From: Rebecca billardiae RCC1528
Taxonomy: Eukaryota; Protista; Haptophyta
Length of the DNA stretch: 64,000 nt
Assembly: GCA_965240325.2 (NCBI GenBank)
Contig: OZ251238.1
Location: 1-64,000 of the forward strand
Direction of reading: 5' to 3'
Shown piece after piece: positions 34,591 to 59,000 of this stretch. The notes beneath the pieces are model-generated. The model was not told the origin of the DNA. It did no database searches and saw only the letters and a list, made by a program, of their open reading frames with translations. Numbering within the stretch: position 1 is the stretch's first letter; each line of letters begins with the position of its first letter. Position numbers and translations under genes: made by a program.

Positions 34591-35427
34591 GGTTGGGCGA
34601 GCGAACGGGCGGCGTGAGCTGATTGGCGCACCGAGCACGATTCCGAATACAAAATGAGCGCGGCGGTTGCCGTGTCGTCGGCCAATGAATCGACGACGAC
34701 GAGCTGCCCGCTCTACTTGCGAGTATACAGCAACAAGTCGTAGCGCGATGAATCGTAACCGTAACAGGTACTCGAACTGATGAATACACTCGCACGGCGG
34801 CGTGCGCGCGCGAGGCGCAGCGCGCTCGGGTGCTCGGCGCACTGCGGCGGTGGCCGCGCTGGCTGGCCTGGGCGCCTTTGACGGCGCGGTGCGCGCGCTT
34901 AGCTGCACGAGCGGGGCGGTGGTCCGCGACGCGGCGCCGGGCCCGAACGGTCCGGGCTTAATTTTGGCCGTCGCCCAGCAGCGTTATGACATGACACCCC
35001 GTCCCCGGCACTTCTGGCTCGCGTAAGCGGCAGCGGGCAGTGCAGGGCGTTGGGCGTGTGCGGCTTAGGCACGCGCCTCGTCAACCTCGCCGCATGGGCG
35101 GCCTCGCGGGCGACGCGCCGCCCGCGCCCTTCCGTGCTGGCCGCGCGCCGTGCCACGGTCAGTTGCGGCCCCACTCCTGGCACTCCGGCCGCGCAGCCTC
35201 GGGCGGTCTACTCTTTCAGTCTTTGCGGAGCGGCCTTGGGGTGGCTCGGGGGGCGTGGCCTATCCATGCGCCTGAACCGTCGCGCGCTCGATGGGTGGTG
35301 GGCTCGCCGGCCACAGCAACGTCGTCGGGCTGACCGAGTCGTCGCGAGAGAGTTGCTCGCCTGATTGGCTTGGCCGGTCGGGCGGCAGCTTGCTGCTTGC
35401 GGAATATGTCCGCGTGGCGCGCACTGG

Positions 35428-37683: not shown

Positions 37684-38031
37684 TTCGCGCCGCCGACGGC
37701 CCGGCCGGGGCGGGCGGGCGTGTCGCCCCGAGTTGGGCGACACGCCGGCCGGGGCGGTTTCAAGTCCGGGGCGGCCAACCACGAAAAGCCGTGCCAAAAA
37801 AAGCCTCATGAGTGCTTCCGCAGCGGCCGAACTATCGCGCGGGTACACGCATGGCGTGATTGGTATTGGGCACTATCATACTGTACATATCGGCACGGAG
37901 CTGCTTGGAGGTGCGGTGCGCCGGCTCCAGCTGCTCATGGTCGTTTTGCACCGGGGCGAGAGAGGCCGAGCCGCACCCGCCACCTGCCACAACCGCGCCG
38001 TGTGTGGGTGTGGCAAGCCGCCATCGCCATC

Positions 38032-41000
38032 ATGGAGCTCACGCTGGACGAGCAACGCGCCTCGCGCGGAGCCGCGCGCAGGCGAGGCGCTGCCGACCCG
38101 CGCGACGGCGGGAACGCCGCCGCACGCGCCCTCGACGCCGCAGCCCACCCGGGCGAGGCGTGGCCGCGGCTCATCGCCCCAGCCGCTGCGCCGCGCTCAG
38201 ACGCGGCCGCGTGCCGCCGGCCGCATCCGACGCGGCACGGCGGCGCGGCCGACGCCGCCCGCGTGGGCAGCCCGGCGCAGCCCGAGCGGGACAAGGCGGC
38301 CAGTGCGCGCGCCGCCCGCCCCCGCTCGCGGCCGGCGCCGTCCGCGCGCGGATCGGCGCGCTGGCTCCCGAGCGCGCTCGCGGCCGCGGCGCTGCTGCTC
38401 GGCTGCGCGCCGCGCGCGGCCGCGCAATCGACAGCGACGTGCACCGAGCTGCGCACGCTGTACGGCCTGTCCGACTCGTGGCAGCTCTCGGCCGCCGCGG
38501 GCTTCGAGCGCGTCTGCGGCGAGTCCCGCCACCCGTGGGGCACGGGCTTCAGCTCGTACGAGGCCATCACCAACTGGGACATCTGCCCCGCGTCCGTGTG
38601 GTTTGTGTGGCAGGACGCCAACACCGCGTGCACCGACATCGGCGCGCGGCTGTGCACGCAGGCGGAGGTCGAGGCGGACGTCGCGGCGAACGGCGACGGC
38701 CAGTGCGGCACGTACGACGGCACGCCGTGGGACCAGCACCGCTTCTGGACGAGCACGCAGTGCGGCAAGAACGCGGACAACCGGCGGCGCGTGCCGGGCG
38801 CGTCCGCGTACGCGGCCGAGGGCGCGCAGTGCAAGAACGGCGTGAGCGGCATCAACAACGCGGGGATCAAGTGCTGCGCCGACGAGCCCGCGCCGCCGCC
38901 CTCGCCGCCCGCGCCGCCGCCGAGCCCGCCGAGCCCGCCGCCCAGCCCGCCGCCCTCGCCCGCGCCGCCGCCGAGCCCGCCGCCCTCGCCCGCGCCGCCG
39001 CCGAGCCCGCCGCCGTCGCCGCCGCCGAGCCCACCGCCGTCACCGCCGCCGTCGCCGCCGCCGAGCCCGCCGCCGCAGCCGCCGGTGCCGCCGCCGCCCG
39101 TCCCGCCACCGTCGCCCCCGCCCGGCGCGCCGCCCGGCGCGCCGCCCAGCCCGCCGCCGAGCCCGCCGCCGAGCCCGCCGCCCTCGCCGCCGCCCTCGCC
39201 GCCGCCGCCCTCGCCGCCGCCCTCGCCGCCGCCCTCGCCGCCGCCCTCGCCACCACCCAGCCCGCCGAGCCCGCCGCCCTCGCCGCCGCAGGCGACGACG
39301 TCGTGCGCGACGCTGCAGTCCCTCTACGGCGGCTGGCCGCTCGCCTCCGACCCCGGCTTCGCGCTGGTGTGCGGCGAGAGCAACAACGGGCTCGACGGCT
39401 CGGGCGGCAGCCAGTGCTCGGGGCTGCGCGACCACAACTCCGCCATCGAGTTCTGCCAGCGCGTGAACGCGCGGCTGTGCACGTACCAGGAGCTGCAGGC
39501 TGACGTGGCGGCGAACACGGGGTGCGACCTCGAGAACGCGCGCGTGTGGACCAACCAGGCGTGCTCCAACCCCGCCGCCCCGGACGTGGACAACTTCTGG
39601 AGCGTGGGCGGCTCCAACGCGTCCACGCTGCCGCTGCGCTGCCGCACGTGGGACAAGACGTACAGCGTGCGCTGCTGCGCGGACGTGCTCGAGTCGCCGC
39701 CGCCGCCGCTGCCGCCGCCGAGCCCGCCGCCCACGCCGCCGCCCAGCCCGCCGCCCAGCCCGCCGCCGCCGCTGCCGCCGCCGTCGCCGCCGCCGAGCCC
39801 GCCGCCGAGCCCGCCGCCGTCGCCGCCGCCGAGCCCGCCGCCGTCGCCGCCGCCGTCGCCGCCGCCGAGCCCGCCGCCGGGCTCGCCACCGCACCCGCCG
39901 CCGAGCCCGCCGCCGAGCCCGCCGCCGGGCTCGCCACCGCACCCGCCGCCGTCGCCGCCGCCCGGCCAGCCGCCATCGCCGCCGCCGAGCCCGCCGCCGA
40001 GCCCGCCGCCGTCGCCGCCGCCGAGCCCGCCGCCCAGCCCGTCGCCGCAGCCGCCGCCGAGCCCGCCACCGTCGCCTCCGCCGAGCCCGCCGCCGTCGCC
40101 GCCGCCCGGCCAGCCGCCATCGCCGCCACCGAGCCCGCCGCCGAGCCCACCACCAAGCCCGCCGCCTTCGCCGCCGCCGTCGCCACCACCGAGCCCACCG
40201 CCGAGCCCGCCGCCAAGCCCGCCGCCCTCGCCGCCGCCGAGCCCGTCGCCGCAGCCACCGCCGAGCCCGCCGCCCGCCTCGCCGCCAAGCCCGCCGCCAT
40301 CGCCGCCGCCCAGCCCACCGCCGCCGTCGCCGCCGCCGAGCCCGCCGCCGAGCCCGCCGCCACGGCCGCCGCCCAGCCCGCCGCCGAGCCCGCCGCCCAG
40401 CCCGCCGCCCAGCCCGCCCCCGCCGGCTGTGGAGCCGTCGCCACCGCCCTCGCCGCCACCGCAGGCCCCGCCTTCTCCGCCGCCGAGCCCACCGCCGAGC
40501 CCACCGCCGGGCGCGCCGCCGGGCCCGCCGCCGAGCCCGCCACCGACCCCGCCGCCACCAGCGCCGCCTCCAAGCCCGCCTCCGTCTCCGCCGCCATCGC
40601 CACCGCCGTCGCCACCGCCGTCGCCTTTCCCGAGCCCTCCGCCGAGCCCACCGCCCCCGGGCGCGCCGCCAACGCCGCCTCCGTCGCCTCCCCCCGCGCA
40701 GCCTCCACGCCCACCGCCGTCACCCCCGCCGTCACCCCCGCCGTCGCCCCCGCCGTCGCCCCCGCCGTCGCCCCCGCCGTCGCCCCCGCCGTCGCCTCCG
40801 CCGACAGCCGCGCCGTCACCGCCGCCGTCGCCGCCACCAAGCCCGCCCCCTTCGCCGCCGCCGAGCCCACCGCCGCCCGACCCGCCACCCTCGCCGCCGC
40901 CTAGCCCGCCCCCTAGCCCGCCGCCGTGGCAGCCACCTTCGCCGCCGCCGAGCCCGCCCCCGTCGCCGCCGCCGTCGCCGCCACCGGCGGCATCGCCGCT

Positions 41001-44000
41001 GCCACCGCCGTCCCCGCCACCGCGGCCTCCGCCGAGCCCGCCTCCATCACCACCGCCCTCGCCACCGCCGAGCCCGCCGCCGAGCCCGCCTCCGTCGCCA
41101 CCGCCGTCGCCGCCACCGGCAGCCTCGCCGCTGCCACCACCGTCCCCGCCGCCGTCGTCGCCGCCGAGCCCGCCACCATCACCACCGCCCTCGCCGCCGC
41201 CCTCGCCGCCGCCCTCGCCGCCGCCGAGCCCGCCTCCGTCGCCACCGCCGTCGCCGCCACCGGCAGCCTCGCCGCTGCCACCGCCGTCCCCGCCGCCATC
41301 GCCGCCGCCGAGCCCGCCGCCATCACCACCGCCTTCGCCTCCTCCCAGCCCACCGCCGCCAGTCCCACCGCTCTCGCCGCCCCCTAGCCCTCCGCCCAGC
41401 CCGCCGCCGTCGCCACCGCCGGCGCCGCCACCGCCACCGAGGGCGCAGCCCTTCCCACCGCCGAGCCCACCTGCGCCGCCGCCCAGCCCTCCGCCGAGCC
41501 CGCCGCCTGTGCCGCCACCGAGCCCGCCACCGGCGTCACCTCCGCGGCCACCGCCCTCGCCACCGCCGAGTCCACCGCCGCCAGTCCCGCCGCCCTCACC
41601 TCCGCCGCAGCCACCGCCGAGCCCGCCACCGACGCAGCCGCCGTCCCCGCCACCCTCGCCGCCACCTTCGCCACCGCCGAGCCCGCCGCCGAGCCCGCCT
41701 CCGTCGCCACCGCCGTCGCCGCCACCGGCAGCCTCGCCGCTGCCACCGCCGAGCCCGCCGCCATCGCTGCCGCCGAGCCCGCCGCCATCACCACCGCCCT
41801 CGCCGCCGCCCTCGCCGCCGCCGAGCCCGCCTCCGTCGCCACCGCCGTCGCCGCCACCGGCAGCCTCGCCGCTGCCACCGCCGTTCCCGCCGCCATCGCC
41901 GCCGCCGAGCCCGCCGCCATCACCACCGCCTTCGCCTCCTCCGAGCCCACCGCCGCCAGTCCCACCGCCCTCGCCGCCCCCTAGCCCTCCGCCCAGCCCG
42001 CCGCCGTCGCCACCGCCGGCGCCGCCACCGCCACCGAGGGCGCAGCCCTTCCCACCGCCGAGCCCACCTGCGCCGCCGCCCAGCCCTCCGCCGAGCCCGC
42101 CGCCTGTGCCGCCACCGAGCCCGCCACCGGCGTCACCTCCGCGGCCACCGCCCTCGCCACCGCCAAGCCCACCGCCGCCAGTGCCGCCGCCGTCCCCTCC
42201 TCCACAGCCGCCGCCGAGCCCGCCACCGACGCAGCCGCCGTCCCCGCCGCCCTCGCCACCGCCTTCGCCGCCGCCGAGCCCGCCGCCGTCGCCGCCGCCA
42301 TCGCCACCACCGTCGCCGCCACCGGCAGCCTCGCCGCTGCCACCACCGTCCCCGCCGCCATCGCCACCGCCGAGCCCGCCACCATCACCACCGCCCTCGC
42401 CGCCGCCTTCGCCGCCGCCCTCGCCGCCGCCCTCGCCGCCGCCGAGCCCGCCTCCGTCGCCACCGCCCTCGCCGCCACCGGCAGCCTCGCCGCTGCCACC
42501 ACCGTCCCCGCCGCCATCGCCACCGCCGAGCCCGCCGCCATCACCACCGCCCTCGCTGCCGCCTTCGCCGCCGCCCTCGCCGCCGCCCTCGCCGCCGCCT
42601 TCGCCGCCGCCCTCGCCGCCGCCCTCGCCGCCGCCGAGCCCGCCTCCGTCGCCACCGCCCTCGCCGCCACCGGCAGCCTCGCCGCTGCCACCGCCGTCCC
42701 CGCCGCCATCGCCGCCGCCGAGCCCGCCGCCATCACCACCGTTCTCGCCGCCGCCTTCGCCGCCGCCCTCGCCGCCGCCCTCGCCGCCGCCGAGCCCACC
42801 TCCGTCGCCACCGCCGTCGCCGCCACCGGCAGCCTCGCCGCTGCCACCGCCGAGCCCGCCGCCATCGCTGCCGCCGAGCCCGCCGCCATCACCACCGCCC
42901 TCGCCGCCGCCCTCGCCGCCGCCGAGCCCGCCTCCGTCGCCACCGCCGTCGCCGCCACCGGCAGCCTCGCCGCTGCCACCGCCGTTCCCGCCGCCATCGC
43001 CGCCGCCGAGCCCGCCGCCATCACCACCGCCTTCGCCTCCTCCGAGCCCACCGCCGCCAGTCCCACCGCCCTCGCCGCCCCCTAGCCCTCCGCCCAGCCC
43101 GCCGCCGTCGCCACCGCCGGCACCGCCACCGCCACCGAGGGCGCAGCCCTTCCCACCGCCGAGCCCACCTGCGCCGCCGCCCAGCCCTCCGCCGAGCCCG
43201 CCGCCGCAGCCGCCGCCGAGCCCGCCACCGGCGTCACCTCCGCTGCCACCGCCCTCGCCACCGCCGAGCCCACCGCCGCCAGTGCCGCCGCCGTCCCCTC
43301 CTCCACAGCCGCCGCCGAGCCCGCCACCGACGCAGCCGCCGTCCCCGCCGCCCTCGCCACCGCCTTCGCCGCCGCCGAGCCCGCCTCCGTCGCCGCCGCC
43401 ATCGCCACCAACGTCGCCGCCACCGGCAGCCTCGCCGCTGCCACCACCGTCCCCGCCGCCATCGCCACCGCCGAGCCCGCCGCCATCACCACCGCCCTCG
43501 CCGCCACCTTCGCCGCCGCCGAGCCCGCCTCCATCGCCACCGCCGAGCCCGCCTCCGTCGCCACCGCCGTCGCCGCCACCGGCAGCGTCGCCGCTGCCAC
43601 CGCCGTCTCCGCCCCCATCGCCGCCGCCGAGCCCGCCGCCATCACCACCGCCTTCGCCTCCTCCGAGCCCACCGCCGCCAGTCCCACCGCCCTCGCCGCC
43701 CCCTAGCCCTCCGCCTAGCCCGCCGCCGTCGCCACCGCCGGCACCGCCACCGCCACCGAGGGCGCAGCCCTTCCCACCGCCGAGCCCACCTGCGCCGCCG
43801 CCCAGCCCTCCGCCGAGCCCGCCGCCGCAGCCGCCGCCGAGCCCGCCACCGGCGTCACCTCCGCTGCCACCGCCCTCGCCACCGCCGAGCCCACCGCCGC
43901 CAGTGCCGCCGCCGTCCCCTCCTCCACAGCCGCCGCCGAGCCCGCCACCGACGCAGCCGCCGTCCCCGCCGCCCTCGCCACCGCCTTCGCCGCCGCCGAG

Positions 44001-47000
44001 CCCGCCTCCGTCGCCGCCGCCGTCGCCGCCACCGGCAGCCTCGCCGTTGCCACCGCCGTCCCCGCCGCCATCGCCACCGCCGAGCCCGCCGCCATCACCA
44101 CCGCCCTCGCCGCCGCCCTCGCCGCCGCCCTCGCCGCCACCCTCGCCGCCGCCGAGCCCGCCTCCGTCGCCACCGCCGTCGCCGCCACCGGCAGCCTCGC
44201 CGTTGCCACCGCCGTCCCCGCCGCCATCGCCGCCGCCGAGCCCGCCGCCATCACCACCGCCTTCGCCTCCTCCAAGCCCACCGCCGCCAGTCCCACCGCC
44301 CTCACCGCCCCCTAGCCCTCCGCCCAGCCCGCCGCCGTCGCCACCGCCGGCACCGCCACCGCCACCGAGGGCGCAGCCCTTCCCACCGCCGAGCCCACCT
44401 GCGCCGCCGCCCAGCCCTCCGCCGAGCCCGCCGCCGCAGCCGCCGCCGAGCCCGCCACCGGCGTCACCTCCGCGGCCACCGCCCTCGCCACCGCCGAGCC
44501 CACCGCCGCCAGTGCCGCCGCCGTCCCCTCCTCCACAGCCGCCGCCGAGCCCGCCACCGACGCAGCCGCCGTCCCCGCCGCCCTCGCCACCGCCTTCGCC
44601 GCCGCCGAGCCCGCCTCCGTCGCCGCCGCCATCGCCACCACCGTCGCCGCCACCGGCAGCCTCGCCGCTGCCACCGCCGTCCCCGCCGCCATCGCCGCCG
44701 CCGAGCCCACCGCCATCACCGCCGCCCTCGCCGCCGCCCTCGCCGCCGCCGAGCCCGCCTCCGTCGCCACCGCCGTCGCCGCCACCGGCAGCCTCGCCGC
44801 TGCCACCGCCGTCCCCTCCGCCATCGCCGCCGCCGAGCCCGCCGCCATCACTACCGCCCTCGCCTCCTCCGAGCCCACCGCCAAGCCCGCCGCCATCGCC
44901 ACCGCCATCGCAGCCACCGGCGGCCTCGCCACTGCCGCCGCCCTCTCCGCCGCCTTCACCGCCGCCGAGCCCGTCACCATTGCCACCGCCCTCGCCGCCG
45001 CCCTCGCCGCCGCCCTCCCCGCCGCCAAGCCCACCGCCGAGCCCACTGCCGAGCCCGCCTCCGTCGCCACCACCGTCGCCACCACCGGCGGCCTCGCCGC
45101 TGCCGCCGCCCTCTCCGCCGCCTTCGCCGCCGCCCTCGCCGCCGCCCTCGCCGCCGCCCTCGCCGCCGCCCAGCCCAGTGCCCTCCCCGCCGCCATCGCC
45201 GCCGCCATCGCCGCCGCCCTCCCCGCCGCCCAGCCCACCGCCGAGCCCACCGCCGAGTCCGCCTCCGTCGCCGCCGCCGTCGCCACCGCCGGCCTCGCCA
45301 CTGCCGCCGCCCTCTCCGCCGCCTTCGTCTCCGCCGAGCCAGCCGCCCTCACCGCCGCCCTTGCCGCCGCCCTCGCCGCCGCCCTCGCTGCCGCCCTCGC
45401 CGCCTCCTCACCCGCCGCCCAGCCCACCGCCGAGCCCACCGCCGAGTCCGCCTCCGTCGCCGCCGCCGTCGCCACCGCCGGCCTCGCCACTGCCGCCGCC
45501 CTCTCCGCCGCCTTCACCGCCGCCGAGCCCGTCACCATTGCCACCGCCCTCGCCGCCGCCCTCGCCGCCGCCCTCCCCGCCGCCCAGCCCACCGCCGAGC
45601 CCACTGCCGAGCCCGCCTCCGTCGCCACCACCGTCGCCACCACCGGCGGCCTCGCCGCTGCCGCCGCCCTCTTCGCCGCCTTCGCCGCCGCCCTCGCCGC
45701 CGCCCTCGCCGCCGCCCTCGCCGCCGCCCAGCCCAGTGCCCTCCCCGCCGCCATCGCCGCCGCCATCGCCGCCGCCCTCCCCGCCGCCCAGCCCACCGCC
45801 GAGCCCACCGCCGAGTCCGCCTCCGTCGCCGCCGCCGTCGCCACCGCCGGCCTCGCCACTGCCGCCGCCCTCTCCGCCGCCTTCGTCTCCGCCGAGCCAG
45901 CCGCCCTCACCGCCGCCCTTGCCGCCGCCCTCGCCGCCGCCCTCGCTGCCGCCCTCGCCGCCTCCTCACCCGCCGCCCAGCCCACCGCCGAGCCCGCCTC
46001 CGTCGCCGCCGCCGTCGCCACCCCCGGCACCACCGCCGTCGCCGCCGCCGTCGCCGCCGCCTTTGCCGCCGCCGAGCCCGCCTCCATCACCACCGCCCTC
46101 GCCGCCACCGTCGCCGCTTCCCAGCCCGCCACCAAGCCCTCCGCCAACGCTGCCGCCGTCCCCTCCGCCCTCGCCACCGCCGTCTCCTCCGCCGAGCCCG
46201 CCGCCTTTGCCGCCGCCGCCCCGGCCACCGCCCTCCCCTCCTCCCAGCCCCCCACCAAGCCCGCCACCGTCGCCCCCTCCATCGCAGCCGCCGCAGCCAC
46301 CGCCCTCCCCACCGCCATCCCCACCGCCATCCTCGCCTCCTGCACCGCCGCCGCCACGCCCGCCGCCGTCGCCTCCTCCGTCCTTGCCACCATCCCCACC
46401 GCCGTCCCCGCCACCGTCAGCACCACCCGCGCCACCGCCAAGCCCACCGCCATCACCGCCACCTGCTCCGCAGCCGCCGTCTCCGCCGCCGTCGCCGCCG
46501 CCGAGCCCACCCCCTTCACCGCCGCCCAGCCCGCTGCCACCGCTCCCGCCGCCGTCGCCGCCGAGTCCGCCGCCGCCGCGCACGCTGCCATTCCCGCCGC
46601 CGTCGCCGCCGTCGCCGCCGCTTCCGCCGTTCGCGTTTGGCGCGGACGCGCTGGTCTCTGACGCGCAGATCACGCTGTACACGACGAGCAGCAGCCCGGG
46701 CGCGGCTGTGCACGGCACGGTCAGCAGCGCCGGCAACCGGCACAACTTGACGGTGGGCTTCTTGGCGGGCGCGTCTGCCGGCGCGTCCGGCACTGTGCGC
46801 GCCGCGTCGCACGGCATCGATCTCGGCGTGGCGAGCAGCTACAGCGTGACCGCCGAGCAGGCGGCGAGCGTGGAGTGCGCGGTGCGCACGCCGACGGCGT
46901 ACGCGGACCGCACAGGCGTGCGCGTCGCGTACCAGCTTCGCGATGCGGCGCACCGCTCGTCCGTGCTCACCACGGGTCTGAGCGTGAGCCTGACGCTGTC

Positions 47001-50000
47001 GCTGGTCGGCGGCTCCGACCAGAGCTTCTCGTGCGGCTCGCCGGGCGCGACGACGGGCGTGGGCGAGTGCTCGGCCACCGTGAGCGCGGGCTGGTTCAGC
47101 ACGGCCGCAGCGGGCAGTGTCGACGTGCTCGTCGAGTTCAACTACGGCGGCGGCACCGTCGGCTCGTGCTCTCGTGCGGGCGCGGTTACGCTCGCCGAGA
47201 GCCCGACCGCGTACACACTCCCGTCGGTCGGCCTGCTGGGCCAGATGGCGCAGTCGCCCGTGTTTGCGGGCGACAGCTTCGAGCTGGTGATGTACGCGCA
47301 CACGGGCGGCGTCGCGCTCATCACCTGGCAGATCAACATTGCGTACGACTCGAGCGTGCTCAGCGTCGCCAGCACGTCGGTCGCGAGCACGTACAACTCG
47401 CCGGAGGTGAGCGACAACGCGGCCGGCCTCGTGTCGATCATCGCGACGGGGCTCACCGGTGGCACGACCAACGCGCAGGTGACAGGCACGGCCGTGGAGC
47501 TGATCACGCTGACGATGAGCGTGGCAGGGGGCGCCTCCGCGGGCAGCTACGCCGGCGCCATCTCGGTCGAGATCGAGCAGTATGTGAACGACGCGACGCA
47601 GGTGTACGTGAGCGAGCAGGCGGGCGTGGTTGCCGACGCGGACGATGGCGCGTCAGCGAGCGGCACGCTCGTGGTGGAGACGGTGGCTGTGCAGGGCTGG
47701 CTCGCATACGTCGCCTCGGGCGAGCTGGTCAACACAGCGCCGCTCTCCGGCACCGACGTGACCACCGCGCTCAGCGTGCTTGAGCTGTACAGCCGCGCGG
47801 CCACTTCGTCTGCCACTCAGTCGAGCGGCTACTCGTGCCTCGCGCTCGACTCGAGCGTGCTCAGCACCAGCGCAGGGTCGCCGTGCACGGTGGTGGCGAG
47901 CAGCTCGAGCACGTCGGGCGCCGCGACGGCCCTCGTGAACGTGACGCGCGACTCGAGCGGCGCTGTGGTCGCGAGCGTGCCGCTGCGCGTGTGGCACCCG
48001 CTGTCCGCAGAGATCCGCTTTGGGCATGGCACGCTCTTCGCCATCAAGGGCGCGTCGCAGCCCGGCCAGTGTGGCACGCAGGCGTTCCAGTCGACGACGG
48101 CCAGCCTCGTCGCGTCGTTTGGAGGGTCGGACCTGAGCACGGTGAGCGACGTGGACGTGACGCGCGAGGCGACGCTCGCCTCGGGCGACGCCGGCGTCGC
48201 GAGCATCTCCACGTCCAGCACGACCGGCGTGGCGACGGTGGCGGGCGTGGGCGTCGGCTCGGCTGCTATCAGCGCATCCGGCTCGAGCCCGTCGATCTCG
48301 TCGACGATTGTGGTGTCGGCGGACGTGGAGCGCCGCATCGCATCGCTCCGGCCAGTGGCATTCAACTCGATCGCCTTCGTCGACTCGCCGTCGACGCTGA
48401 GTGTGGGCGCGACGAGCGGCTTCGATGCGTCGGCTGCTCTCGGGCAGACGCTCACAGCCGAAGGGCAGACGGTGAGCGTGTACACGTACGCGTACCTCGG
48501 CGACGGCTCGTACGAGCTCGTGCCGTCGACGGAGGTCACGCTGACGAGCCGCACGTCGAGTCTCACCGTCGCTGCACCCGGCGACGCATCGTCGCCGTGG
48601 ACGGCTACAGTGGCCACGTTTGCCACGTCGCAGGAGGGCCTGCTCCTCGACGCGAGCTGGATCGACTCGTGCAGCGCCGTGCTGGCAACGGGCCGCGCAC
48701 GCGTGGATCTGGAGTTGCCCAACGCGGTGAGCGTGGCAGTGAGCGCATCGGCCGACGAGGTGACAGTGCCGGGCGACCCTGCCGCAGAGCCGCCGACGTC
48801 GCTGCCCACGTCGCTCACCGTCACGATCACGGTCACGTTTGAAGACGAGTCGCAGGTGGACTTCACCACCGACCCGCGCACCAACATCACACTCTCGGTG
48901 CCGTCGTCGTGCGCCACGTTCGACGGCGTGAACCAGGTGACGATGACGAGCGGCGCGACGTGCACTGCTCTCAACGTGACCGTCTTTGTCGACTCGTACC
49001 TCCTGAGCGGCTTCGTCGAGGTGCCGGTCGTGACGGCTGCTGGCGCGTCATTCGAGATCACGCTCGAGGACGACACGCTCGGGCTGATCGGCGCGTCCGC
49101 CACGTTCCAGCGCACGGCCACGACGCCATCGGCCACGCTGAGCGACGGTACGGTGGTCTCTCCTACGCTGCTGGCTGCTGAGATGGTGCTGGCGTCGAAC
49201 GACACGCTCGTTGCGACCACGTCAGGCAGCACTGTCATCGGCGTGGGCGCTGGCGTTGCGCTCATCAACGCGACGTGGGGCACGCTCACAGCGTCAGCCA
49301 CCGTCTACGTCGACGCGACTGCGGTGAAGGTGACGGCGCTGACGCTGGGCCTGGGCGGCTTGACGTCTGGCGCGTCGCTGCTTGCCAGCAACGGCACGTC
49401 GAGCACGCTGAGCGCGCTCGTCACGCTCGAGGACGGCGTGCAGTACACCAACCTGATGTCGCTGGGGTACGTGAGCGTGTCAGAGGTGCTCAGCTTCGAG
49501 AGCGACGACGCGGCCGTGCTCGGCGTCGACCCGAACGGTGGGGTGACAATCGCTGGCAACAGTCGCGACTCGGCAAACACGATCACAGCGACGTCGCTCG
49601 ATGCTGGCGCGGTCGCAGACGCCCTCGACGTGACGGCGAACCTGCAGCCTGGCACGCACGACGTGGACCTCGGCTCGGCGAGCGGACTGCAGCTCCAGCA
49701 GTCGGGCAACTCTCTCACAGTGCCAGTGCGCGTGAACACGGGCGGCAGCTCGGAGTACCTGGTCAACTTCCAGATCGAGCTGGCCATCGACAGCGCTGTC
49801 CTGGTCGCGACGTCGTGCAGCACGCTCTCGTGGGCCGAGTGCACGATCAACGACCCGCTCAACGAGGTCAGGTTTGTGGGCAACACGGCGTCACAAATCA
49901 CCAGCGGCACTGCCGCCTCGATCGGCTCCGTCACGTTCGACGTGCTGTCCTCGGCGAGCACGTCGCTGACGGGAAGCATCGTCGAGCTCGTGACAGTGCA

Positions 50001-53000
50001 GGGTGCGACAGAGACGCGCGTGCAGAACGCCGACATCTTCGCGGGCGCAGGCGGCCTCACGACGACCGTCAGCCGGCGGCGCGCGCTCGCGCTGGCAGCT
50101 GAGTACGTTCCGCCCCTGTTCGTGCCGACCGAGCCGAGCCGGGCGGCGCGCGCGCGGCGGCTGGCGGAGTGCTCGGGCTGCTCCGCTGCCATCGTCGGCG
50201 ACGTGAATGGCGACTGCGCCCTGACCTCATTTGACGTGCGCGTGCTCTCGCAGTTCGTCATCGGCGTGTCCGGGCTGACGACGTGCACATCCGCGCTCGA
50301 CCCGACGCTGGACAACAGCACGGGTGCGCAGGATGTGCAGTACCAGCTGCGCGCGGTCGCGGGCAAGTACCGCTTCCTGACGAGCTACAGCATCACGTCG
50401 GGCGCCATCGGCGTCGGCACGAGCGAGCCGCTCGTTGCGTCCGTCGTCGTGACGAAGGACGACAACACAGTCGCCGACGACAGCCAGACGAGCGTCTTCT
50501 TCGAGATCGGAGTGGCAGCTGCGTCGCACACGCCCGTGTACGTGAACGGCACGGACAACGGCACCTCTGCCGAGGGCTTCTGGGTGGGGCGCGGCGAGTA
50601 CACCAACGGCGTGTTCAGCGTTGGAGTGTACCCGAGCGGCGGGTGGCCGCAGGCGCTCAGCGGGTCGCTGGGTGTTGCTGTGATGATCGAGACGACGGAC
50701 GCGCTGGGGAACGGCGCTGACGACCGCAAGTTCCCGTTCCTCGGCTCGTCCGCGCAGTTCTACGCCGACTTCCTGTACACGTTCAGCCCGCTGCTCTCGA
50801 CAGCGGTGATCGGGCCTCCGCTGCCACCGCCACCGCTGCCGCCGCCGTCGCCGCCGCCTCCGGCGCCACCGCCGAGCCCGCCGCCTCCAGCGCCGCCGCC
50901 CACCCCACCTCCCCTGCCACCGCCTACGCCGCCGCCTTCACCGCCACCTTCGCCGCCTCCATCGCCGCCGCCGCTGCCGCCGGTTCCGCCCCCTTCGCCG
51001 CCGCCGCTGCCGCCGCCATCGCCTCCGCCATCCCCGCCGCCGTCGCCTCCCCCTGCCCCGGCTCCGCCGCCCAGCCCACCGCCCACCCCGCCACCGTCCC
51101 CGCCGCCGCGGCCAGCGCCACCCCCGTCCCCGCCGCCTGCCCCGCCGCCTTCGCCGCCGCCGTCGCAGCCGCCATCGCCGCCGCCGTCGCCACCACCGTC
51201 TCCGCCACCATCTCCGCCGCCAAGCCAGCCGCCCAGCCCACCGCCTAGCCCGCCGCCGTCACCACCACCAGCGCCCTCGCCGCTGCCACCGCCATCTCCG
51301 CCGCCGCGGCCGCCGCCGAGCCCGCCGCCATCGCCACCGCCCTCGCCGCCCCCCTCGCCGCCGCCCTCGCCGCCGCCCTCGCCGCCGCCGAGCCCACCGC
51401 CGTCGCCGCCGCCGTCGCCACCACCAGCGCCGCGGCCGCCGCCAAGCCCGCCGCCATCACCACCGCCCTCGCCGCCGCCGTCGCCGCCGCCCTCGCCGCC
51501 GCCGAGCCCGCCTCCGTCGCCACCGCCGTCGCCGCCACCGGCAGCCTCGCCGCTGCCACCACCGTCTCCGCCACCGTCGCCGCCACCGAGCCCGCCGCCA
51601 TCACCACCGCCCTCGCCGCCGCCCTCGCCGCCGCCCTCTCGGCCGCCCTCGCCGCCGCCGAGCCCGCCGCCATCGCCGCCGCCGAACCCGCCGCCATCGC
51701 CACCGCCTTCGCCGCCGCCCTCTCCGCCGCCGAGCCCGCCTCCGTCGCCACCGCCGTCGCCGCCACCGGCAGCCTCGCCGCTGCCACCACCGTCGCCGCC
51801 GCCATCGCCGCCACCGAGCCCGCCGCCATCACCACCGCCTTCGCCGCCGCCCTCTCCGCCGCCCTCGCCGCCGCCGAGCCCGCCTCCGTCGCCACCGCCA
51901 TCGCCGCCACCAGCAGCCTCGCCGCTGCCGCCGCCGTCGCCGCCGCCATCGCCGCCGCCGAGCCCGCCGCCATCACCGCCGCCCTCCCCGCCGCCCTCGC
52001 CGCCGCCGAGCCCGCCTCCGTCGCCACCGCCGTCGCCGCCGCCCTCTCCGCCGCCGAGCCCGCCTCCGTCGCCACCGCCGTCGCCGCCACCGGCAGCCTC
52101 GCCGCTGCCGCCACCGTCGCCGCCGCCATCGCCGCCGCCGAACCAGCCGCCATCACCACCGCCTTCGCCGCCGCCCTCTCCGCCGCCGAGCCCGCCTCCG
52201 TCGCCACCGCCGTCGCCGCCACCGGCAGCCTCGCCGCTGCCACCACCGTCGCCGCCGCCATCGCCGCCGCCGAGCCAGCCGCCATCACCACCGCCTTCGC
52301 CGCCGCCCTCTCCGCCGCCGAGCCCGCCTCCGTCGCCACCGCCGTCGCCGCCACCGGCAGCCTCGCCGCTGCCACCGCCTTTGCCGCCGCCCTCTCCGCC
52401 GCCGAGCCCGCCTCCGTCGCCACCGCCGTCGCCGCCACCGGCAGCCTCGCCGCTGCCACCACCGTCGCCGCCGCCATCGCCGCCACCGAGCCCGCCGCCA
52501 TCACCACCGCCTTCGCCGCCGCCCTCTCCGCCGCCGAGCCCGCCTCCGTCGCCACCGCCATCGCCGCCACCGGCAGCCTCGCCGCTGCCACCACCGTCCC
52601 CGCCGCCATCGCCGCCGCCGAGCCAGCCGCCATCACCACCGCCTTCGCCGCCGCCCTCTCCGCCGCCGAGCCCGCCTCCGTCGCCACCGCCGTCGCCGCC
52701 ACCGGCAGCCTCGCCGCTGCCACCACCGTCGCCGCCGCCATCACCACCGCCTTCGCCGCCGCCCTCCCCGCCGCCCTCGCCGCCGCCGAGCCCGCCTCCG
52801 TCGCCACCGCCATCGCCGCCACCGGCAGCCTCGCCGCTGCCACCGCCGTCGCCGCCGCCATCGCCGCCGCCGAGCCCGCCGCCATCACCACCGCCTTCGC
52901 CGCCGCCCTCTCCGCCGCCGAGCCCGCCTCCGTCGCCACCGCCGTCGCCGCCACCGGCAGCCTCGCCGCTGCCACCACCGTCGCCGCCGCCATCGCCGCC

Positions 53001-56000
53001 GCCGAGCCCGCCGCCATCACCACCGCCTTCGCCGCCGCCCTCCCCGCCGCCCTCGCCGCCGCCGAGCCCGCCTCCGTCTCCACCGCCATCGCCGCCACCG
53101 GCAGCCTCGCCGCTGCCACCACCGTCGCCGCCGCCATCGCCGCCGCCGAGCCCGCCGCCATCACCACCGCCTTCGCCGCCGCCCTCCCCGCCGCCCTCGC
53201 CGCCGCCGAGCCCGCCTCCGTCGCCACCGCCGTCGCCGCCACCGGCAGCCTCGCCGCTTCCACCACCGTCCCCGCCGCCGTCGCCGCCGCCGAGCCCGCC
53301 GCCATCACCACCGCCTTCGCCTCCTCCGAGCCCACCGCCGCCAGTCCCACCGCCCTCGCCGCCCCCTAGCCCTCCGCCCAGCCCGCCGCCGTCGCCACCG
53401 CCGGCACCGCCACCGCCACCGAGGGCGCAGCCCTTCCCACCGCCGAGCCCACCTGCGCCGCCGCCCAGCCCTCCGCCGAGCCCGCCGCCGCAGCCGCCGC
53501 CGAGCCCGCCCCCGGTGTCACCTCCGCTGCCACCGCCCTCGCCACCGCCCAGCCCACCGCCGCCGGCGCCGCCGCCGTCCCCTCCTCCACAGCCGCCGCC
53601 GAGCCCGCCACCGACGCAGCCGCCGTCCCCGCCACCCTCGCCGCCACCTTCGCCGCCGCCCAGCCCGCCTCCGACGCCACCGCCATCGCCACCACCGTCG
53701 CCGCCACCGGCAGCCTCGCCGCTGCCACCACCGTCTCCGCCGCCGTCGCCGCCGCCGAGCCCGCCGCCATCACCACCGCCTTCGCCGCCGCCCTCCCCGC
53801 CGCCCTCGCTGCCGCCGAGCCCGCCTCCGTCGCCACCGCCGTCGCCGCCACCGGCAGCCTCGCCGCTGCCACCGCCGTCGCCGCCGCCATCGCCGCCGCC
53901 GAGCCCGCCGCCATCACCACCGCCTTCGCCGCCGCCCTCCCCGCCGCCCTCGCCGCCGCCGAGCCCGCCTCCGTCGCCACCACCATCGCCGCCACCGGCA
54001 GCCTCGCCGCTTCCACCACCGTCGCCGCCGCCATCGCCGCCGCCGAGCCCGCCTCCGTCGCCACCGCCATCGCCGCCACCGGCAGCCTCGCCGCTGCCAC
54101 CACCGTCCCCGCCGCCATCGCCGCCGCCGAGCCAGCCGCCATCACCACCGCCTTCGCCGCCGCCCTCTCCGCCGCCGAGCCCGCCTCCGTCGCCACCGGA
54201 TTCGCCGCCACCGGCAGCCTCGCCGCTGCCACCACCGTCGCCGCCGCCATCGCCGCCGCCGAGCCCGCCGCCATCACCACCGCCTTCGCCGCCGCCCTCC
54301 CCGCCGCCCTCGCCGCCGCCGAGCCCGCCTCCGTCTCCACCGCCATCGCCGCCACCGGCAGCCTCGCCGCTGCCACCACCGTCGCCGCCGCCATCGCCGC
54401 CGCCGAGCCCGCCGCCATCACCACCGCCTTCGCCTCCTCCGAGCCCACCGCCGCCAGTCCCACCGCCCTCGCCGCCCCCTAGCCCTCCGCCCAGCCCGCC
54501 GCCGTCGCCACCGCCGGCACCGCCACCGCCACCGAGGGCGCAGCCCTTCCCACCGCCGAGCCCACCTGCGCCGCCGCCCAGCCCTCCGCCGAGCCCGCCG
54601 CCGCAGCCGCCGCCGAGCCCGCCCCCGGTGTCACCTCCGCTGCCACCGCCCTCGCCACCGCCCAGCCCACCGCCGCCGGCGCCGCCGCCGTCCCCTCCTC
54701 CACAGCCGCCGCCGAGCCCGCCACCGACGCAGCCGCCGTCCCCGCCACCCTCGCCGCCACCTTCGCCGCCGCCCAGCCCGCCTCCGACGCCACCGCCATC
54801 GCCACCACCGTCGCCGCCACCGGCAGCCTCGCCGCTGCCACCACCGTCTCCGCCGCCGTCGCCGCCGCCGAGCCCGCCGCCATCACCACCGCCTTCGCCG
54901 CCGCCCTCCCCGCCGCCCTCGCCGCCGCCGAGCCCGCCTCCGTCGCCACCGCCATCGCCGCCACCGGCAGCCTCGCCGCTTCCACCACCGTCGCCGCCGC
55001 CATCGCCGCCGCCGAGCCCGCCGCCATCACCACCGCCCTCGTCGCCGCCCTCTCGGCCGCCCTCGCCGCCGCCGAGCCCGCCTCCGTCGCCACCGCCATC
55101 GCCGCCACCGGCAGCCTCACCGCTGCCACCGCCGTCCCCGCCGCCGTCGCCGCCACCGAGCCCGCCGCCATCACCACCGCCTTCGCCGCCGCCCTCCCCG
55201 CCGCCCTCGCCGCCGCCGAGCCCGCCTCCGTCGCCACCGCCGTCGCCGCCACCGGCAGCCTCGCCGCTGCCACCGCCGTCCCCGCCGCCGTCGCCGCCGC
55301 CGAGCCCGCCGCCATCACCACCGCCTTCGCCTCCTCCGAGCCCACCGCCGCCAGTCCCACCGCCCTCGCCGCCCCCTAGCCCTCCGCCCAGCCCGCCGCC
55401 GTCACCACCGCCGGCACCGCCACCGCCACCGAGGGCGCAGCCCTTCCCACCGCCGAGCCCACCTGCGCCGCCGCCCAGCCCTCCGCCGAGCCCGCCGCCG
55501 CAGCCGCCGCCGAGCCCGCCCCCGGCGTTACCTCCGCTGCCACCGCCCTCGCCACCGCCGAGCCCACCGCCGCCGGCGCCGCCGCCGTCCCCTCCTCCAC
55601 AGCCGCCGCCGAGCCCGCCTCCGTCGCCGCCGCCATCGCCACCACCGTCGCCGCCACCGGCAGCCTCGCCGCTGCCACCACCGTCTCCGCCGCCGTCGCC
55701 GCCGCCGAGCCCGCCGCCATCACCACCGCCTTCGCCGCCGCCCTCTCCGCCGCCCTCGCCGCCGCCGAGCCCGCCTCCGTCGCCACCGCCGTCGCCGCCA
55801 CCGGCAGCCTCGCCGCTGCCACCGCCGTCGCCGCCGCCATCGCCGCCGCCGAGCCCGCCGCCATCACCACCGCCTTCGCCTCCTCCGAGCCCACCGCCGC
55901 CAGTCACACCGCCCTCGCCGCCCCCTAGCCCTCCGCCTAGCCCGCCGCCGTGGCCACCGCCGGCACCGCCACCGCCACCGAGGGCGCAGCCCTTCCCACC

Positions 56001-59000
56001 GCCGAGCCCACCTGCGCCGCCGCCCAGCCCTCCGCCGAGCCCGCCGCCGCAGCCGCCGCCGAGCCCGCCCCCGGTGTCACCTCCGCTGCCACCGCCCTCG
56101 CCACCGCCCAGCCCACCGCCGCCGGCGCCGCCGCCGTCCCCTCCTCCACAGCCGCCGCCGAGCCCGCCACCGACGCAGCCGCCGTCCCCGCCACCCTCGC
56201 CGCCACCTTCGCCGCCGCCCAGCCCGCCTCCGACGCCACCGCCATCGCCACCACCGTCGCCGCCACCGGCAGCCTCGCCGCTGCCACCACCGTCTCCGCC
56301 GCCGTCGCCGCCGCCGAGCCCGCCGCCATCACCACCGCCTTCGCCGCCGCCCTCCCCCGCCGCCCTCGCCGCCGCCGAGCCCGCCTCCGTCGCCACCGCC
56401 ATCGCCGCCACCGGCAGCCTCGCCGCTTCCACCACCGTCGCCGCCGCCATCGCCGCCGCCGAGCCCGCCGCCATCACCACCGCCCTCGTCGCCGCCCTCT
56501 CGGCCGCCCTCGCCGCCGCCGAGCCCGCCTCCGTCGCCACCGCCATCGCCGCCACCGGCAGCCTCACCGCTGCCACCGCCGTCCCCGCCGCCGTCGCCGC
56601 CGCCGAGCCCGCCGCCATCACCACCGCCTTCGCCGCCGCCCCTCCCCGCCGCCCTCGCCGCCGCCGAGCCCGCCTCCGTCGCCACCGCCGTCGCCGCCAC
56701 CGGCAGCCTCGCCGCTGCCACCGCCGTCCCCGCCGCCGTCGCCGCCGCCGAGCCCGCCGCCATCACCACCGCCTTCGCCTCCTCCGAGCCCACCGCCGCC
56801 AGTCCCACCGCCCTCGCCGCCCCCTAGCCCTCCGCCCAGCCCGCCGCCGTCACCACCGCCGGCACCGCCACCGCCACCGAGGGCGCAGCCCTTCCCACCG
56901 CCGAGCCCACCTGCGCCGCCGCCCAGCCCTCCGCCGAGCCCGCCGCCGCAGCCGCCGCCGAGCCCGCCCCCGGCGTTACCTCCGCTGCCACCGCCCTCGC
57001 CACCGCCGAGCCCACCGCCGCCGGCGCCGCCGCCGTCCCCTCCTCCACAGCCGCCGCCGAGCCCGCCTCCGTCGCCGCCGCCATCGCCACCACCGTCGCC
57101 GCCACCGGCAGCCTCGCCGCTGCCACCACCGTCTCCGCCGCCGTCGCCGCCGCCGAGCCCGCCGCCATCACCACCGCCTTCGCCGCCGCCCTCCCCGCCG
57201 CCCTCGCCGCCGCCGAGCCCGCCTCCGTCGCCACCGCCGTCGCCGCCACCGGCAGTCTCGCCGCTGCCACCGCCGTCGCCGCCGCCATCGCCGCCGCCGA
57301 GCCCGCCGCCATCACCACCGCCTTCGCCGCCGCCCTCCCCGCCGCCCTCGCCGCCGCCGAGCCCGCCTCCGTCGCCACCGCCGTCGCCGGCACCGGCAGC
57401 CTCGCCGCTGCCACCGCCGTCATCGCCGCCGCCGAGCCCGCCGCCATCACCACCGCCTTCGCCGCCGCCCTCTCCGCCGCCGAGCCCGCCTCCGTCGCCA
57501 CCGCCGTCGCCGCCACCGGCAGCCTCGCCGCTGCCACCACCGTCGCCGCCGCCATCGCCGCCGCCGAGCCCGCCGCCATCACCACCGCCTTCGCCGCCGC
57601 CCTCCCCGCCGCCCTCGCCGCCGCCGAGCCCGCCTCCGTCTCCACCGCCATCGCCGCCACCGGCAGCCTCGCCGCTGCCACCACCGTCGCCGCCGCCATC
57701 GCCGCCGCCGAGCCCGCCGCCATCACCACCGCCTTCGCCGCCGCCCTCCCCGCCGCCCTCGCCGCCGCCGAGCCCGCCTCCGTCGCCACCGCCGTCGCCG
57801 CCACCGGCAGCCTCGCCGCTTCCACCACCGTCCCCGCCGCCGTCGCCGCCGCCGAGCCCGCCGCCATCACCACCGCCTTCGCCTCCTCCGAGCCCACCGC
57901 CGCCAGTCCCATCGCCCTCGCCGCCCCCTAGCCCTCCGCCCAGCCCGCCGCCGTCGCCACCGCCGGCACCGCCACCGCCACCGAGGGCGCAGCCCTTCCC
58001 ACCGCCGAGCCCACCTGCGCCGCCGCCCAGCCCTCCGCCGAGCCCGCCGCCGCAGCCGCCGCCGAGCCCGCCCCCGGTGTCACCTCCGCTGCCACCGCCC
58101 TCGCCACCGCCCAGCCCACCGCCGCCGGCGCCGCCGCCGTCCCCTCCTCCACAGCCGCCGCCGAGCCCGCCACCGACGCAGCCGCCGTCCCCGCCACCCT
58201 CGCCGCCACCTTCGCCGCCGCCCAGCCCGCCTCCGACGCCACCGCCATCGCCACCACCGTCGCCGCCACCGGCAGCCTCGCCGCTGCCACCACCGTCTCC
58301 GCCGCCGTCGCCGCCGCCGAGCCCGCCGCCATCACCACCGCCTTCGCCGCCGCCCTCTCCGCCGCCCTCGCCGCCGCCGAGCCCGCCTCCGTCGCCACCG
58401 CCGTCGCCGCCACCGGCAGCCTCGCCGCTGCCACCGCCGTCGCCGCCGCCATCGCCGCCGCCGAGCCCGCCGCCATCACCACCGCCTTCGCCGCCGCCCT
58501 CCCCGCCGCCCTCGCTGCCGCCGAGCCCGCCTCCGTCGCCACCGCCGTCGCCGCCACCGGCAGCCTCGCCGCTGCCACCGCCGTCGCCGCCGCCATCGCC
58601 GCCGCCGAGCCCGCCGCCATCACCACCGCCTTCGCCGCCGCCCTCCCCGCCGCCCTCGCCGCCGCCGAGCCCGCCTCCGTCGCCACCACCATCGCCGCCA
58701 CCGGCAGCCTCGCCGCTTCCACCACCGTCGCCGCCGCCATCGCCGCCGCCGAGCCCGCCTCCGTCGCCACCGCCATCGCCGCCACCGGCAGCCTCGCCGC
58801 TGCCACCACCGTCCCCGCCGCCATCGCCGCCGCCGAGCCAGCCGCCATCACCACCGCCTTCGCCGCCGCCCTCTCCGCCGCCGAGCCCGCCTCCGTCGCC
58901 ACCGCCGTCGCCGCCACCGGCAGCCTCGCCGCTGCCACCACCGTCGCCGCCGCCATCGCCGCCGCCGAGCCCGCCGCCATCACCACCGCCTTCGCCGCCG

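What the first reader, a model, noticed from the sequence alone, without database searches (positions are those of the whole stretch)
47230..49660. TMEM132-like ectodomain in a non-animal protein
Seen: a cohesin-like strand pattern (PVFAGDSFELVMYAH...AYDSSVL), then ELVNTAPLSG (47722), C..LDSSVL...C, LRVWHP (47983), TLFAIKG, C..QAFQ, DVT, and Big_2-like repeats. Established: animal TMEM132 adhesion proteins have a cohesin followed by Ig domains. From memory they carry NTAxLxG, VWxP and IKG motifs in this order. Inference: an ancient homologue that still has a dockerin beside it, which could hint at the ancestral ligand of the TMEM132 cohesin.
Basis: partly seen in the sequence, partly recalled or inferred. 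Interest (0 to 1): 0.72.

Follow-up and report, generated by a model that had tools for sequence, protein, structure and literature searches.

The report
Algal TMEM132-like cohesin-dockerin adhesion cassette
A giant proline-rich surface-protein gene of a Pavlova-type haptophyte alga contains a 1,380-residue module; its first half is built like the outer part of animal TMEM132 adhesion proteins and its second half adds a second cohesin and a real calcium-loop dockerin, a candidate binding partner that TMEM132 research lacks.

Summary
All the quoted motifs are at the stated coordinates. They lie in one stop-free frame with GC3 of 0.90, inside a + strand reading frame of more than 26 kb made mostly of (SPPP)n repeats.

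The cassette family is large: 1,735 clusters at 50% identity. Named members come from haptophytes and green algae. The nearest is Pavlovales sp. CCMP2436.

This is a TMEM132-type ectodomain core, not a TMEM132 family member. No membrane anchor, cytoplasmic tail or TMEM132 N-terminal domain was found.

Whether the dockerin binds either cohesin is untested, and it sits next to cohesin 2, not the TMEM132-type cohesin 1.

The scan had already noted this cassette on other DNA pieces of the same genome.

No paper searched describes it. UniProt names some relatives automatically.

The parts
37684..63999 (+). Giant stop-free reading frame of a hydroxyproline-rich-glycoprotein-type gene. It runs off the window end, about 36 kb from a chromosome end.
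   Evidence: 8,772 codons without a stop; per-100-residue view. The proline reading slips frame at about 56355 and again at about 56640.
38359..38424 (+). Signal-peptide-like hydrophobic stretch (…LPSALAAAALLLGCAPRAAAQ). The start codon is not resolved.
   Evidence: Read from the translation; inference only.
38425..38883 (+). First Cys-rich globular module of about 150 residues at the N-terminus. A second copy lies at about 39290-39690.
   Evidence: No Pfam match.
38884..46650 (+). (SPPP)n polyproline repeat array upstream of the cassette, interrupted by the second Cys-rich module.
   Evidence: proline fraction about 0.7. GC 0.81-0.84 with GC skew about -0.42.
46843..47199 (+). First Ig-like beta-sandwich of the cassette, in the position of the TMEM132 'conserved region'/2nd Ig. 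Carries conserved Cys77 and Cys89.
47221..47685 (+). Cohesin 1, in the position of the TMEM132 3rd (cohesin-like) domain.
47695..48003 (+). Ig domain matching the TMEM132 fourth domain (BIG1). Holds ELVNTAPLSG, LRVWHP and the conserved Cys345/Cys361 pair.
   Evidence: PF16070 at 41.2 bits against a cut-off of 27. 60 of 64 relatives match, best 7.2e-25.
48013..48333 (+). Ig domain in the position of the TMEM132 fifth domain (BIG2), with conserved Cys423 (C..QAFQ).
   Evidence: No Pfam hit in the window copy. 17 of 64 relatives match PF23486, best 4.5e-9, and two inspected segments score above the cut-off. Mapped through alignment A5.
48340..48672 (+). Ig domain in the position of the TMEM132 sixth domain (BIG3), with conserved Cys623.
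   Evidence: 17 of 64 relatives match PF23487, best 6.7e-6. The two segments inspected score below the cut-off. Mapped through A5.
48712..49044 (+). Further Ig-like domain of the Big_2 / LigB type.
49114..49434 (+). Big_2-type Ig domain(s). Not modelled here.
   Evidence: Family profile A4 hits LigA at 4.6e-10, LigB at 2.9e-5 and a teneurin-like protein at 1.6e-20, at profile positions 761-864. Mapped to the window.
49651..50076 (+). Cohesin 2.
50077..50187 (+). Linker with two basic clusters (SRRRA at about 50074, RARR at 50149-50160) and a Cys-x2-Cys. A candidate proprotein-convertase-type cleavage site.
   Evidence: An R-x-[KR]-R motif is present in 19 of 38 relatives. Model pLDDT is 56-61 here. 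Cleavage is inference only.
50188..50382 (+). Dockerin with two calcium loops (50200-50235 and 50299-50334).
50371..50748 (+). C-terminal beta-sandwich of the cassette. Its type is unresolved.
50830..63999 (+). Downstream (SPPP)n array with a 144-nt higher-order period. It continues past two frame slips to the window end.

Best explanation
The stretch encodes one copy of a conserved extracellular cassette of about 1,380 residues. The cassette is set between long (SPPP)n polyproline rods in a giant subtelomeric surface or matrix glycoprotein of a pavlovophyte-type haptophyte alga.

Shown: the first half of the cassette has the order Ig, cohesin and three BIG-type Ig domains. It is homologous to the TMEM132 ectodomain core at least across the three BIG domains, and it shares that core's cysteine pattern. 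The second half adds Big_2-type Ig domains, a second cohesin, a flexible basic linker, a canonical two-loop dockerin and a beta-sandwich.

Inferred mechanism: the dockerin binds calcium and plugs into a cohesin. The likeliest partner is the adjacent cohesin 2 in the same chain, forming a compact unit. A partner on another chain is the alternative. Either way the rods would be clasped or cross-linked into the cell covering. Cohesin 1 and the Ig array would then stay free as an adhesion face. The RARR-type site may allow the chain to be cut while the cohesin-dockerin grip keeps the pieces together.
For: Coding and intact.

TMEM132 link: PF16070 scores 41.2 bits against a cut-off of 27 in the window. 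Among 64 relatives the 4th domain matches in 60, the 5th in 17 and the 6th in 17, against Big_2 in only 1. The matches keep the same order and map onto window 47695-48672. Cysteines conserved in at least 90% of sequences number two in BIG1, one in BIG2 and one in BIG3. This is the pattern predicted for TMEM132 in PMC6030884.

The dockerin belongs to the cassette: local HMMs count about 1 Ig4, 2 cohesins and 1 dockerin per cassette, and 101 of 140 proteins carrying Ig4 also carry a dockerin.

Compact unit: model 2 has pTM 0.85 over three domains.

Host lineage: the cassette sits in a fully supported haptophyte clade next to Pavlovales sp. CCMP2436.

Context: a gene with ShK domains and a 2OG-Fe(II) oxygenase domain, of the algal prolyl-4-hydroxylase type, lies 3 kb upstream.
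Against: No binding, calcium dependence, cleavage, hydroxylation or expression was tested.

In the window copy only the 4th TMEM132 domain is significant by itself. The TMEM132 2nd and 3rd models are essentially unmatched. By sequence features, cohesin 1 looks closest to bacterial-type cohesins.

No animal TMEM132 sequence or structure could be fetched, so no direct profile-to-profile or structural superposition was done.

I had no coordinates or PAE, so cis docking is inferred from pTM alone.

The gene's start and end are unresolved. Two frame slips lie downstream.
Confidence: 0.72

Rival explanations
1. Generic adhesin: the cassette is an independent assembly of common Big_2-type Ig domains and a bacterial-type cohesin. 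Its likeness to TMEM132 would then be shared fold plus a chance match of domain order, not common descent of the architecture.
For: The TMEM132 BIG domains are themselves Big_2 relatives (PMC6030884). The family profile also finds bacterial Big_2 proteins and LigA/LigB. TMEM132_2nd and TMEM132_3rd are matched in only 1 of 64 each. Cohesin 1 is nearest to bacterial cohesin clusters.
Against: For the same segment, 60 of 64 relatives choose Ig_TMEM132_4th (down to 7e-25) and only 1 chooses Big_2. Three consecutive TMEM132-specific models match in order. The 2+1+1 cysteine pattern is the same.
Confidence: 0.12
2. One reading: the dockerin is the retained ancestral ligand of the TMEM132-type cohesin (cohesin 1), so it points to what the orphan animal TMEM132 cohesin once bound.
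For: The dockerin is a constant part of the cassette, at about one per Ig4 domain. Relatives with the strongest TMEM132 matches and 13-15 classical cadherin repeats also carry it. PMC6030884 states that no dockerin is detectable in vertebrates.
Against: Each cassette has two cohesins. The dockerin follows cohesin 2 after a 38-residue linker and is modelled in one compact unit with it. Nothing ties it to cohesin 1. The direction of evolution (loss in animals or gain in algae) is not resolved.
Confidence: 0.2
3. Dead or mis-assembled locus: the cassette is part of a decaying subtelomeric repeat gene or an assembly artefact, and makes no protein.
For: The proline reading slips frame twice, at about 56355 and about 56640. 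No clean start codon precedes the signal-like stretch. The locus is 36 kb from a telomere.
Against: The cassette has 1,378 codons without a stop, GC3 of 0.90 and an unbroken alignment to relatives with all conserved Cys and calcium ligands intact. Single-base slips in C-runs are typical long-read errors, and all three frames stay open there.
Confidence: 0.06

Closest known systems
Animal TMEM132A-E ectodomain (Sanchez-Pulido & Ponting 2017, PMC6030884)
   Same: The order is the same: Ig-like region, cohesin, then three tandem BIG Ig domains. Pfam models of the 4th, 5th and 6th TMEM132 domains match the family in order. There are two conserved Cys in BIG1 and one each in BIG2 and BIG3.
   Different: No TMEM132 N-terminal domain, transmembrane helix or cytoplasmic tail with PP1/WIRS motifs was found. 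The cassette lies inside a polyproline giant. It continues with more Ig domains, a second cohesin, a dockerin and a beta-sandwich. By sequence its cohesin is nearer to classical cohesins than to the TMEM132 3rd-domain model.
Premetazoan cadherins with the TMEM132 architecture (coherins, lefftyrins, hedglings of choanoflagellates and sponges; cited in PMC6030884)
   Same: The TMEM132-type module is used as an internal cassette of a much larger extracellular protein. Environmental relatives found here (P0070, P0083) combine 13-15 classical cadherin repeats with two such cassettes each.
   Different: The window protein has no cadherin repeats; its spacers are (SPPP)n rods. The organisms of the cadherin-bearing relatives are unknown. 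Whether published coherins carry the dockerin was not checked.
Bacterial cellulosome type I cohesin-dockerin pairs (for example C. thermocellum 1ohz, 2ccl, 4fl4)
   Same: Both folds are present with whole-domain superpositions. The dockerin has the two duplicated calcium loops, with 22-30% identity to solved dockerins.
   Different: The host is eukaryotic and no enzymes are attached. Cohesins and dockerin are in the same chain. Loop 1 carries a conserved Cys at position 6, and there are upstream Cys residues. Binding is untested.
Algal fibrous hydroxyproline-rich glycoproteins (Chlamydomonas/Volvox HRGPs such as the sexual agglutinins; from my own knowledge)
   Same: Long Ser-Pro-rich shafts carry globular adhesive heads. 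A prolyl-hydroxylase-type gene lies next door.
   Different: A different lineage (haptophyte), and a head made of a TMEM132-like plus cohesin-dockerin cassette. Hydroxylation and glycosylation were not shown.
Database relatives named automatically: 'Transmembrane protein family 132 fourth domain-containing protein' (Prymnesium parvum KAL1521827.1; Cymbomonas tetramitiformis KAK3258399.1)
   Same: The same cassette family.
   Different: Only the 4th domain is flagged by the automatic name. No description of the full cassette or its dockerin was found in the papers searched.

Membership tests
TMEM132 (animal TMEM132A-E) | Fourth domain (BIG1, PF16070) above Pfam's cut-off | tested here: met
   41.2 bits against a cut-off of 27, E 1.7e-10, nt 47707-48000. 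60 of 64 relatives match.
TMEM132 (animal TMEM132A-E) | Fifth domain (BIG2, PF23486) directly after the fourth | tested here: inconclusive
   No hit in the window copy. 17 of 64 relatives match, best 4.5e-9, and two inspected segments score 30.8 bits against a cut-off of 28. These map to window 48013-48333.
TMEM132 (animal TMEM132A-E) | Sixth domain (BIG3, PF23487) after the fifth | tested here: inconclusive
   No hit in the window copy. 17 of 64 relatives match, best 6.7e-6. The inspected hits score 22.0 and 16.3 bits against a cut-off of 27.8. They map to 48340-48672.
TMEM132 (animal TMEM132A-E) | Cohesin-like third domain immediately before BIG1 | tested here: met
TMEM132 (animal TMEM132A-E) | Conserved region / second Ig (PF23481) before the cohesin | tested here: inconclusive
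TMEM132 (animal TMEM132A-E) | Conserved cysteines: one pair inside BIG1 and one BIG2-BIG3 pair (PMC6030884) | tested here: met
   Cys345 and Cys361 lie in BIG1, Cys423 in BIG2 and Cys623 in BIG3, each in at least 90% of 64-68 sequences. Distances in the model could not be read.
TMEM132 (animal TMEM132A-E) | Single transmembrane helix and cytoplasmic tail (PF15706, PP1 and WIRS motifs) right after BIG3; N-terminal domain PF15705 | tested here: not met
   Neither PF15705 nor PF15706 appears in the window or in the 64 relatives' segments. BIG3 is followed by more extracellular domains and (SPPP)n. The gene's true C-terminus is outside the window.
Cohesin (PF00963) | Nine-stranded jelly-roll cohesin fold over the whole domain | tested here: met
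Cohesin (PF00963) | Pfam score above the cut-off | tested here: not met
   21.2 and 18.7 bits against a cut-off of 24.1 in the window. The family profile hits a solved cohesin (7uvg) at E 4.2e-4.
Dockerin type I (PF00404) | Two tandem calcium loops with D/N at positions 1, 3, 5 and 12, each followed by a helix | tested here: met
   Loop 1 reads D-V-N-G-D-…-D, with D/N at these positions in 38 of 38 sequences. Loop 2 reads D-P-T-L-D-…-D, with D at position 12 in 37 of 38. Helices 218-229 and 251-261 follow the loops.
Dockerin type I (PF00404) | Dockerin fold and sequence-profile match | tested here: met
Dockerin type I (PF00404) | Calcium-dependent binding to a cohesin | not testable with these tools
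   Needs a binding assay or a complex model with interface scores.

The most novel reading that the evidence does not exclude
The TMEM132-type ectodomain began as a self-contained cohesin-dockerin cassette that was already present before algae and holozoans diverged, or that moved between them. Animals then kept only the first half. On this reading the orphan cohesin of human TMEM132 proteins descends from a module that bound a dockerin in the same chain, and the algal and cadherin-linked cassettes provide a working cohesin-dockerin pair from which to look for the animal ligand.
Probability: 0.2. Interest if true: 0.8.

Novelty: new variant of a known kind. Interest (0 to 1): 0.6.

Why it matters
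[quoted passage not shown] Their cohesin domain has no known partner, because vertebrates have no detectable dockerin (PMC6030884).

Here the same domain core occurs in algae inside one cassette together with a canonical dockerin and a second cohesin, and the dockerin is a constant part of that cassette in hundreds of relatives. The question 'what can a TMEM132-type cohesin bind?' therefore becomes testable with a few recombinant domains.

The finding also shows that cohesin-dockerin modules, best known from bacterial cellulosomes, are a common building block of giant eukaryotic surface proteins in haptophytes and green algae. This may explain how their polyproline fibres are joined into a cell covering.

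Tried and rejected
- The first large HMMER job failed because the profile had more than 1,200 positions. I ran it again with a shorter alignment.
- The top 150 hits were all full cassettes, so animal TMEM132 sequences never surfaced. Three word searches gave only haptophyte relatives and bacterial Big_2 proteins. No direct profile-to-profile comparison with TMEM132 was therefore possible.
- The PDB holds no TMEM132 detectable by sequence.
- Foldseek with the 760-residue model gave only generic multi-Ig chains such as NUP210, S-layer proteins and alpha-2-macroglobulins, which was uninformative.
- The Atlas fold search did not run.
- The Atlas feature search of the N-terminal half gave only leads below 0.9, pointing to classical cohesins.
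- The supplement of PMC6030884 held no species lists.
- Rejected readings: animal contamination (GC3 of 0.90, embedded in (SPPP)n, haptophyte clade), a chance ORF, and a plain Big_2 adhesin (see rivals).
- The many long antisense or off-frame 'ORFs' listed (Gly- or Ala-rich) are by-products of the GC-rich repeat.
- The telomeric repeat at 1-1630 resembles human telomere sequence and was not sent to any search tool.

Full report
**What is there.** The window starts with about 260 copies of CCCTAA (1-1630). It has 72-84% GC, so it is the end of a chromosome of a GC-rich eukaryote. A single + strand frame is free of stops from 37684 to the window end.

Read in that frame, the gene runs as follows:
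- a signal-like hydrophobic stretch;
- two Cys-rich modules of about 150 residues with no Pfam match;
- about 2,300 residues of (SPPP)n;
- a 1,378-residue non-repetitive island at 46657-50790;
- more (SPPP)n to the end of the window.

The proline reading slips frame at about 56355 and again at about 56640, while all three frames stay open. These could be long-read errors in C-runs or real changes. I could not tell which.

**Observation check.** The island is coding. GC3 is 0.90. It has no stop in 1,378 codons against 7 to 54 stops in the other frames. It aligns without breaks to proteins of Prymnesium polylepis and of an ENA metagenome at 33-34% identity.

**The family.** A profile of the island against 1.84 billion cluster representatives gave 1,735 hits at E ≤ 1e-3 and 555 at E ≤ 1e-30. 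The best 150 are all near-full-length matches, often two to five per protein, in proteins of up to about 8,000 residues.

Named members are:
- Prymnesium parvum, P. polylepis and Chrysotila/Pleurochrysis;
- Pavlovales sp. CCMP2436 and Diacronema lutheri;
- the green algae Cymbomonas tetramitiformis and Mesostigma viride.

In a FastTree of 68 cassettes the window copy lies in a fully supported 17-row haptophyte clade. It is next to Pavlovales sp. CCMP2436 at 38% identity. This agrees with earlier scan notes that call this genome a pavlovophyte.

A separate 26-row clade gives the strongest TMEM132 scores. Two of its members carry 13-15 classical cadherin repeats plus two cassettes each. They lie on sparse, retroelement-bearing, eukaryote-like contigs of unknown origin.

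**Relation to TMEM132.** The window copy passes Pfam's cut-off for Ig_TMEM132_4th, with 41.2 bits against 27. Scanning 64 aligned relatives one by one gave these counts:

| Pfam model | Relatives matched (of 64) | Best E-value |
|---|---|---|
| Ig_TMEM132_4th | 60 | 7.2e-25 |
| Ig_TMEM132_5th | 17 | 4.5e-9 |
| Ig_TMEM132_6th | 17 | 6.7e-6 |
| Cohesin | 12 | 2e-6 |
| Big_2 | 1 | 0.021 |
| Ig_TMEM132_2nd | 1 | 0.031 |
| TMEM132_3rd | 1 | 0.034 |

In individual relatives the hits keep the same order: 4th at about 270-370, 5th at about 380-490, 6th at about 480-580. Through the alignment they map to window 47695-48003, 48013-48333 and 48340-48672.

The cysteines conserved in at least 90% of sequences are two in the 4th domain, one in the 5th and one in the 6th. 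Sanchez-Pulido and Ponting predicted exactly this pattern for TMEM132: one bridge inside BIG1 and one between BIG2 and BIG3 (PMC6030884).

The order Ig, cohesin, BIG1, BIG2, BIG3 is therefore the published TMEM132 core. Homology is well supported for the three BIG domains at the family level. It is supported in the window copy itself for BIG1 only.

This is not a TMEM132 family member. No TMEM132D_N or TMEM132D_C match was found and no membrane helix follows BIG3. The cohesin looks closer to classical cohesins than to the TMEM132 3rd-domain model.

I could not obtain any animal TMEM132 sequence or structure.

A second model covering 405 residues from nt 49576 has pLDDT 86.7 and pTM 0.85. It shows these parts:
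- a low-confidence basic linker;
- a beta-sandwich of unclear type.

Independently of the model, the family profile finds solved dockerins at E 1.3e-7 to 3.3e-6 across both repeats.

Both calcium loops are canonical. In loop 1, D/N occupies positions 1, 3, 5 and 12 in 38 of 38 sequences. In loop 2, D is at position 12 in 37 of 38.

HMMs that I built locally count about one dockerin and two cohesins per 4th-domain hit. 101 of 140 proteins with a 4th domain have a dockerin, and many of the rest are fragments. The dockerin is thus an integral part of the cassette.

The linker carries R-x-[KR]-R in 19 of 38 sequences; in the window it is RARR at 50149-50160.

**How it probably works.** These points are shown:
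- the protein is extracellular in style, with Ig, cohesin and dockerin domains, conserved cysteines and polyproline rods;
- the calcium ligands are intact;
- the arrangement of cohesin 2, dockerin and sandwich is confidently compact.

These points are inferred:
- the dockerin binds calcium and a cohesin, most simply cohesin 2 in the same chain;
- if instead the partner is in another chain, the rods would be cross-linked into a covering;
- the basic site could be cut by a kexin- or furin-type protease, with the cohesin-dockerin grip holding the pieces together.

A neighbouring gene has ShK domains and a 2OG-Fe(II) oxygenase domain (33106-34983). It is of the algal prolyl-hydroxylase type and fits a hydroxyproline-rich product.

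Nothing here shows binding, cleavage, modification or expression.

**Novelty.** No paper in the library links TMEM132 to algae or to a dockerin partner. PMC6030884 places the origin of the architecture in early holozoans and notes only that the N-terminal region and the cohesin occur in 'more diverse eukaryotes'.

Public databases already hold relatives. UniProt names some of them automatically after the 4th domain.

The scan itself had already reported the same cassette on other pieces of this genome. My results agree with those notes on the two cohesins, the dockerin and the haptophyte and green-algal spread. I did not test their claim of a choanoflagellate member.

I class this as a new variant of a known kind.

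**Limits.** No model coordinates or PAE could be read. The gene's ends lie outside what could be resolved. The telomeric repeat was kept out of all searches.

Noticed in passing
window 1-1630: About 260 copies of CCCTAA: a TTAGGG-type telomere, so the window is a chromosome end and the giant gene is subtelomeric. The repeat is human-like and was not sent to any search tool.
   Followed up: partly
window 33106-34983 (-): An open frame with two ShK domains (E 1e-19) and a 2OG-Fe(II) oxygenase domain (E 5e-8). This is the make-up of algal prolyl 4-hydroxylases. It lies 3 kb upstream of the (SPPP)n giant, so it may be a functional neighbour.
   Followed up: partly
window ~56355 and ~56640: The (SPPP)n reading shifts by one base twice, while all three frames remain stop-free. 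Either long-read errors in C-runs or real frameshifts.
   Followed up: partly
window 38425-38883 and ~39290-39690 (+): Two related Cys-rich modules of about 140-150 residues at the N-terminus of the giant protein, ending in CCAD. No Pfam match; possibly a lectin-like head.
   Followed up: partly
window 25107-26384 (-) and 30453-32858 (-): Open frames with a sterol-sensing/Patched domain (E 1e-13) and a protein kinase domain (E 9e-28).
   Followed up: no
L003 (ENA ERZ26694059, 535-kb contig) and L004 (ENA ERZ21742408, 1.2-Mb contig): Environmental eukaryote-like contigs (GC 45%, sparse small ORFs, a reverse-transcriptase fragment) encode tandem giants. Each combines 13-15 classical cadherin repeats with TMEM132-like cohesin-dockerin cassettes. 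They recall choanoflagellate 'coherin'-type cadherins, but the organism is unknown.
   Followed up: partly
window 50830-63999 (+): The downstream proline array has a 144-nt higher-order period marked by AASPLPPP, and longer periods of about 750-1,400 nt. This points to recent tandem amplification.
   Followed up: partly
window 50170-50220 (+): Conserved cysteines just before and inside the first dockerin loop (C-x2-C upstream; Cys at loop position 6 in 31 of 38 relatives). They suggest a disulphide clasp not seen in classical bacterial dockerins.
   Followed up: no
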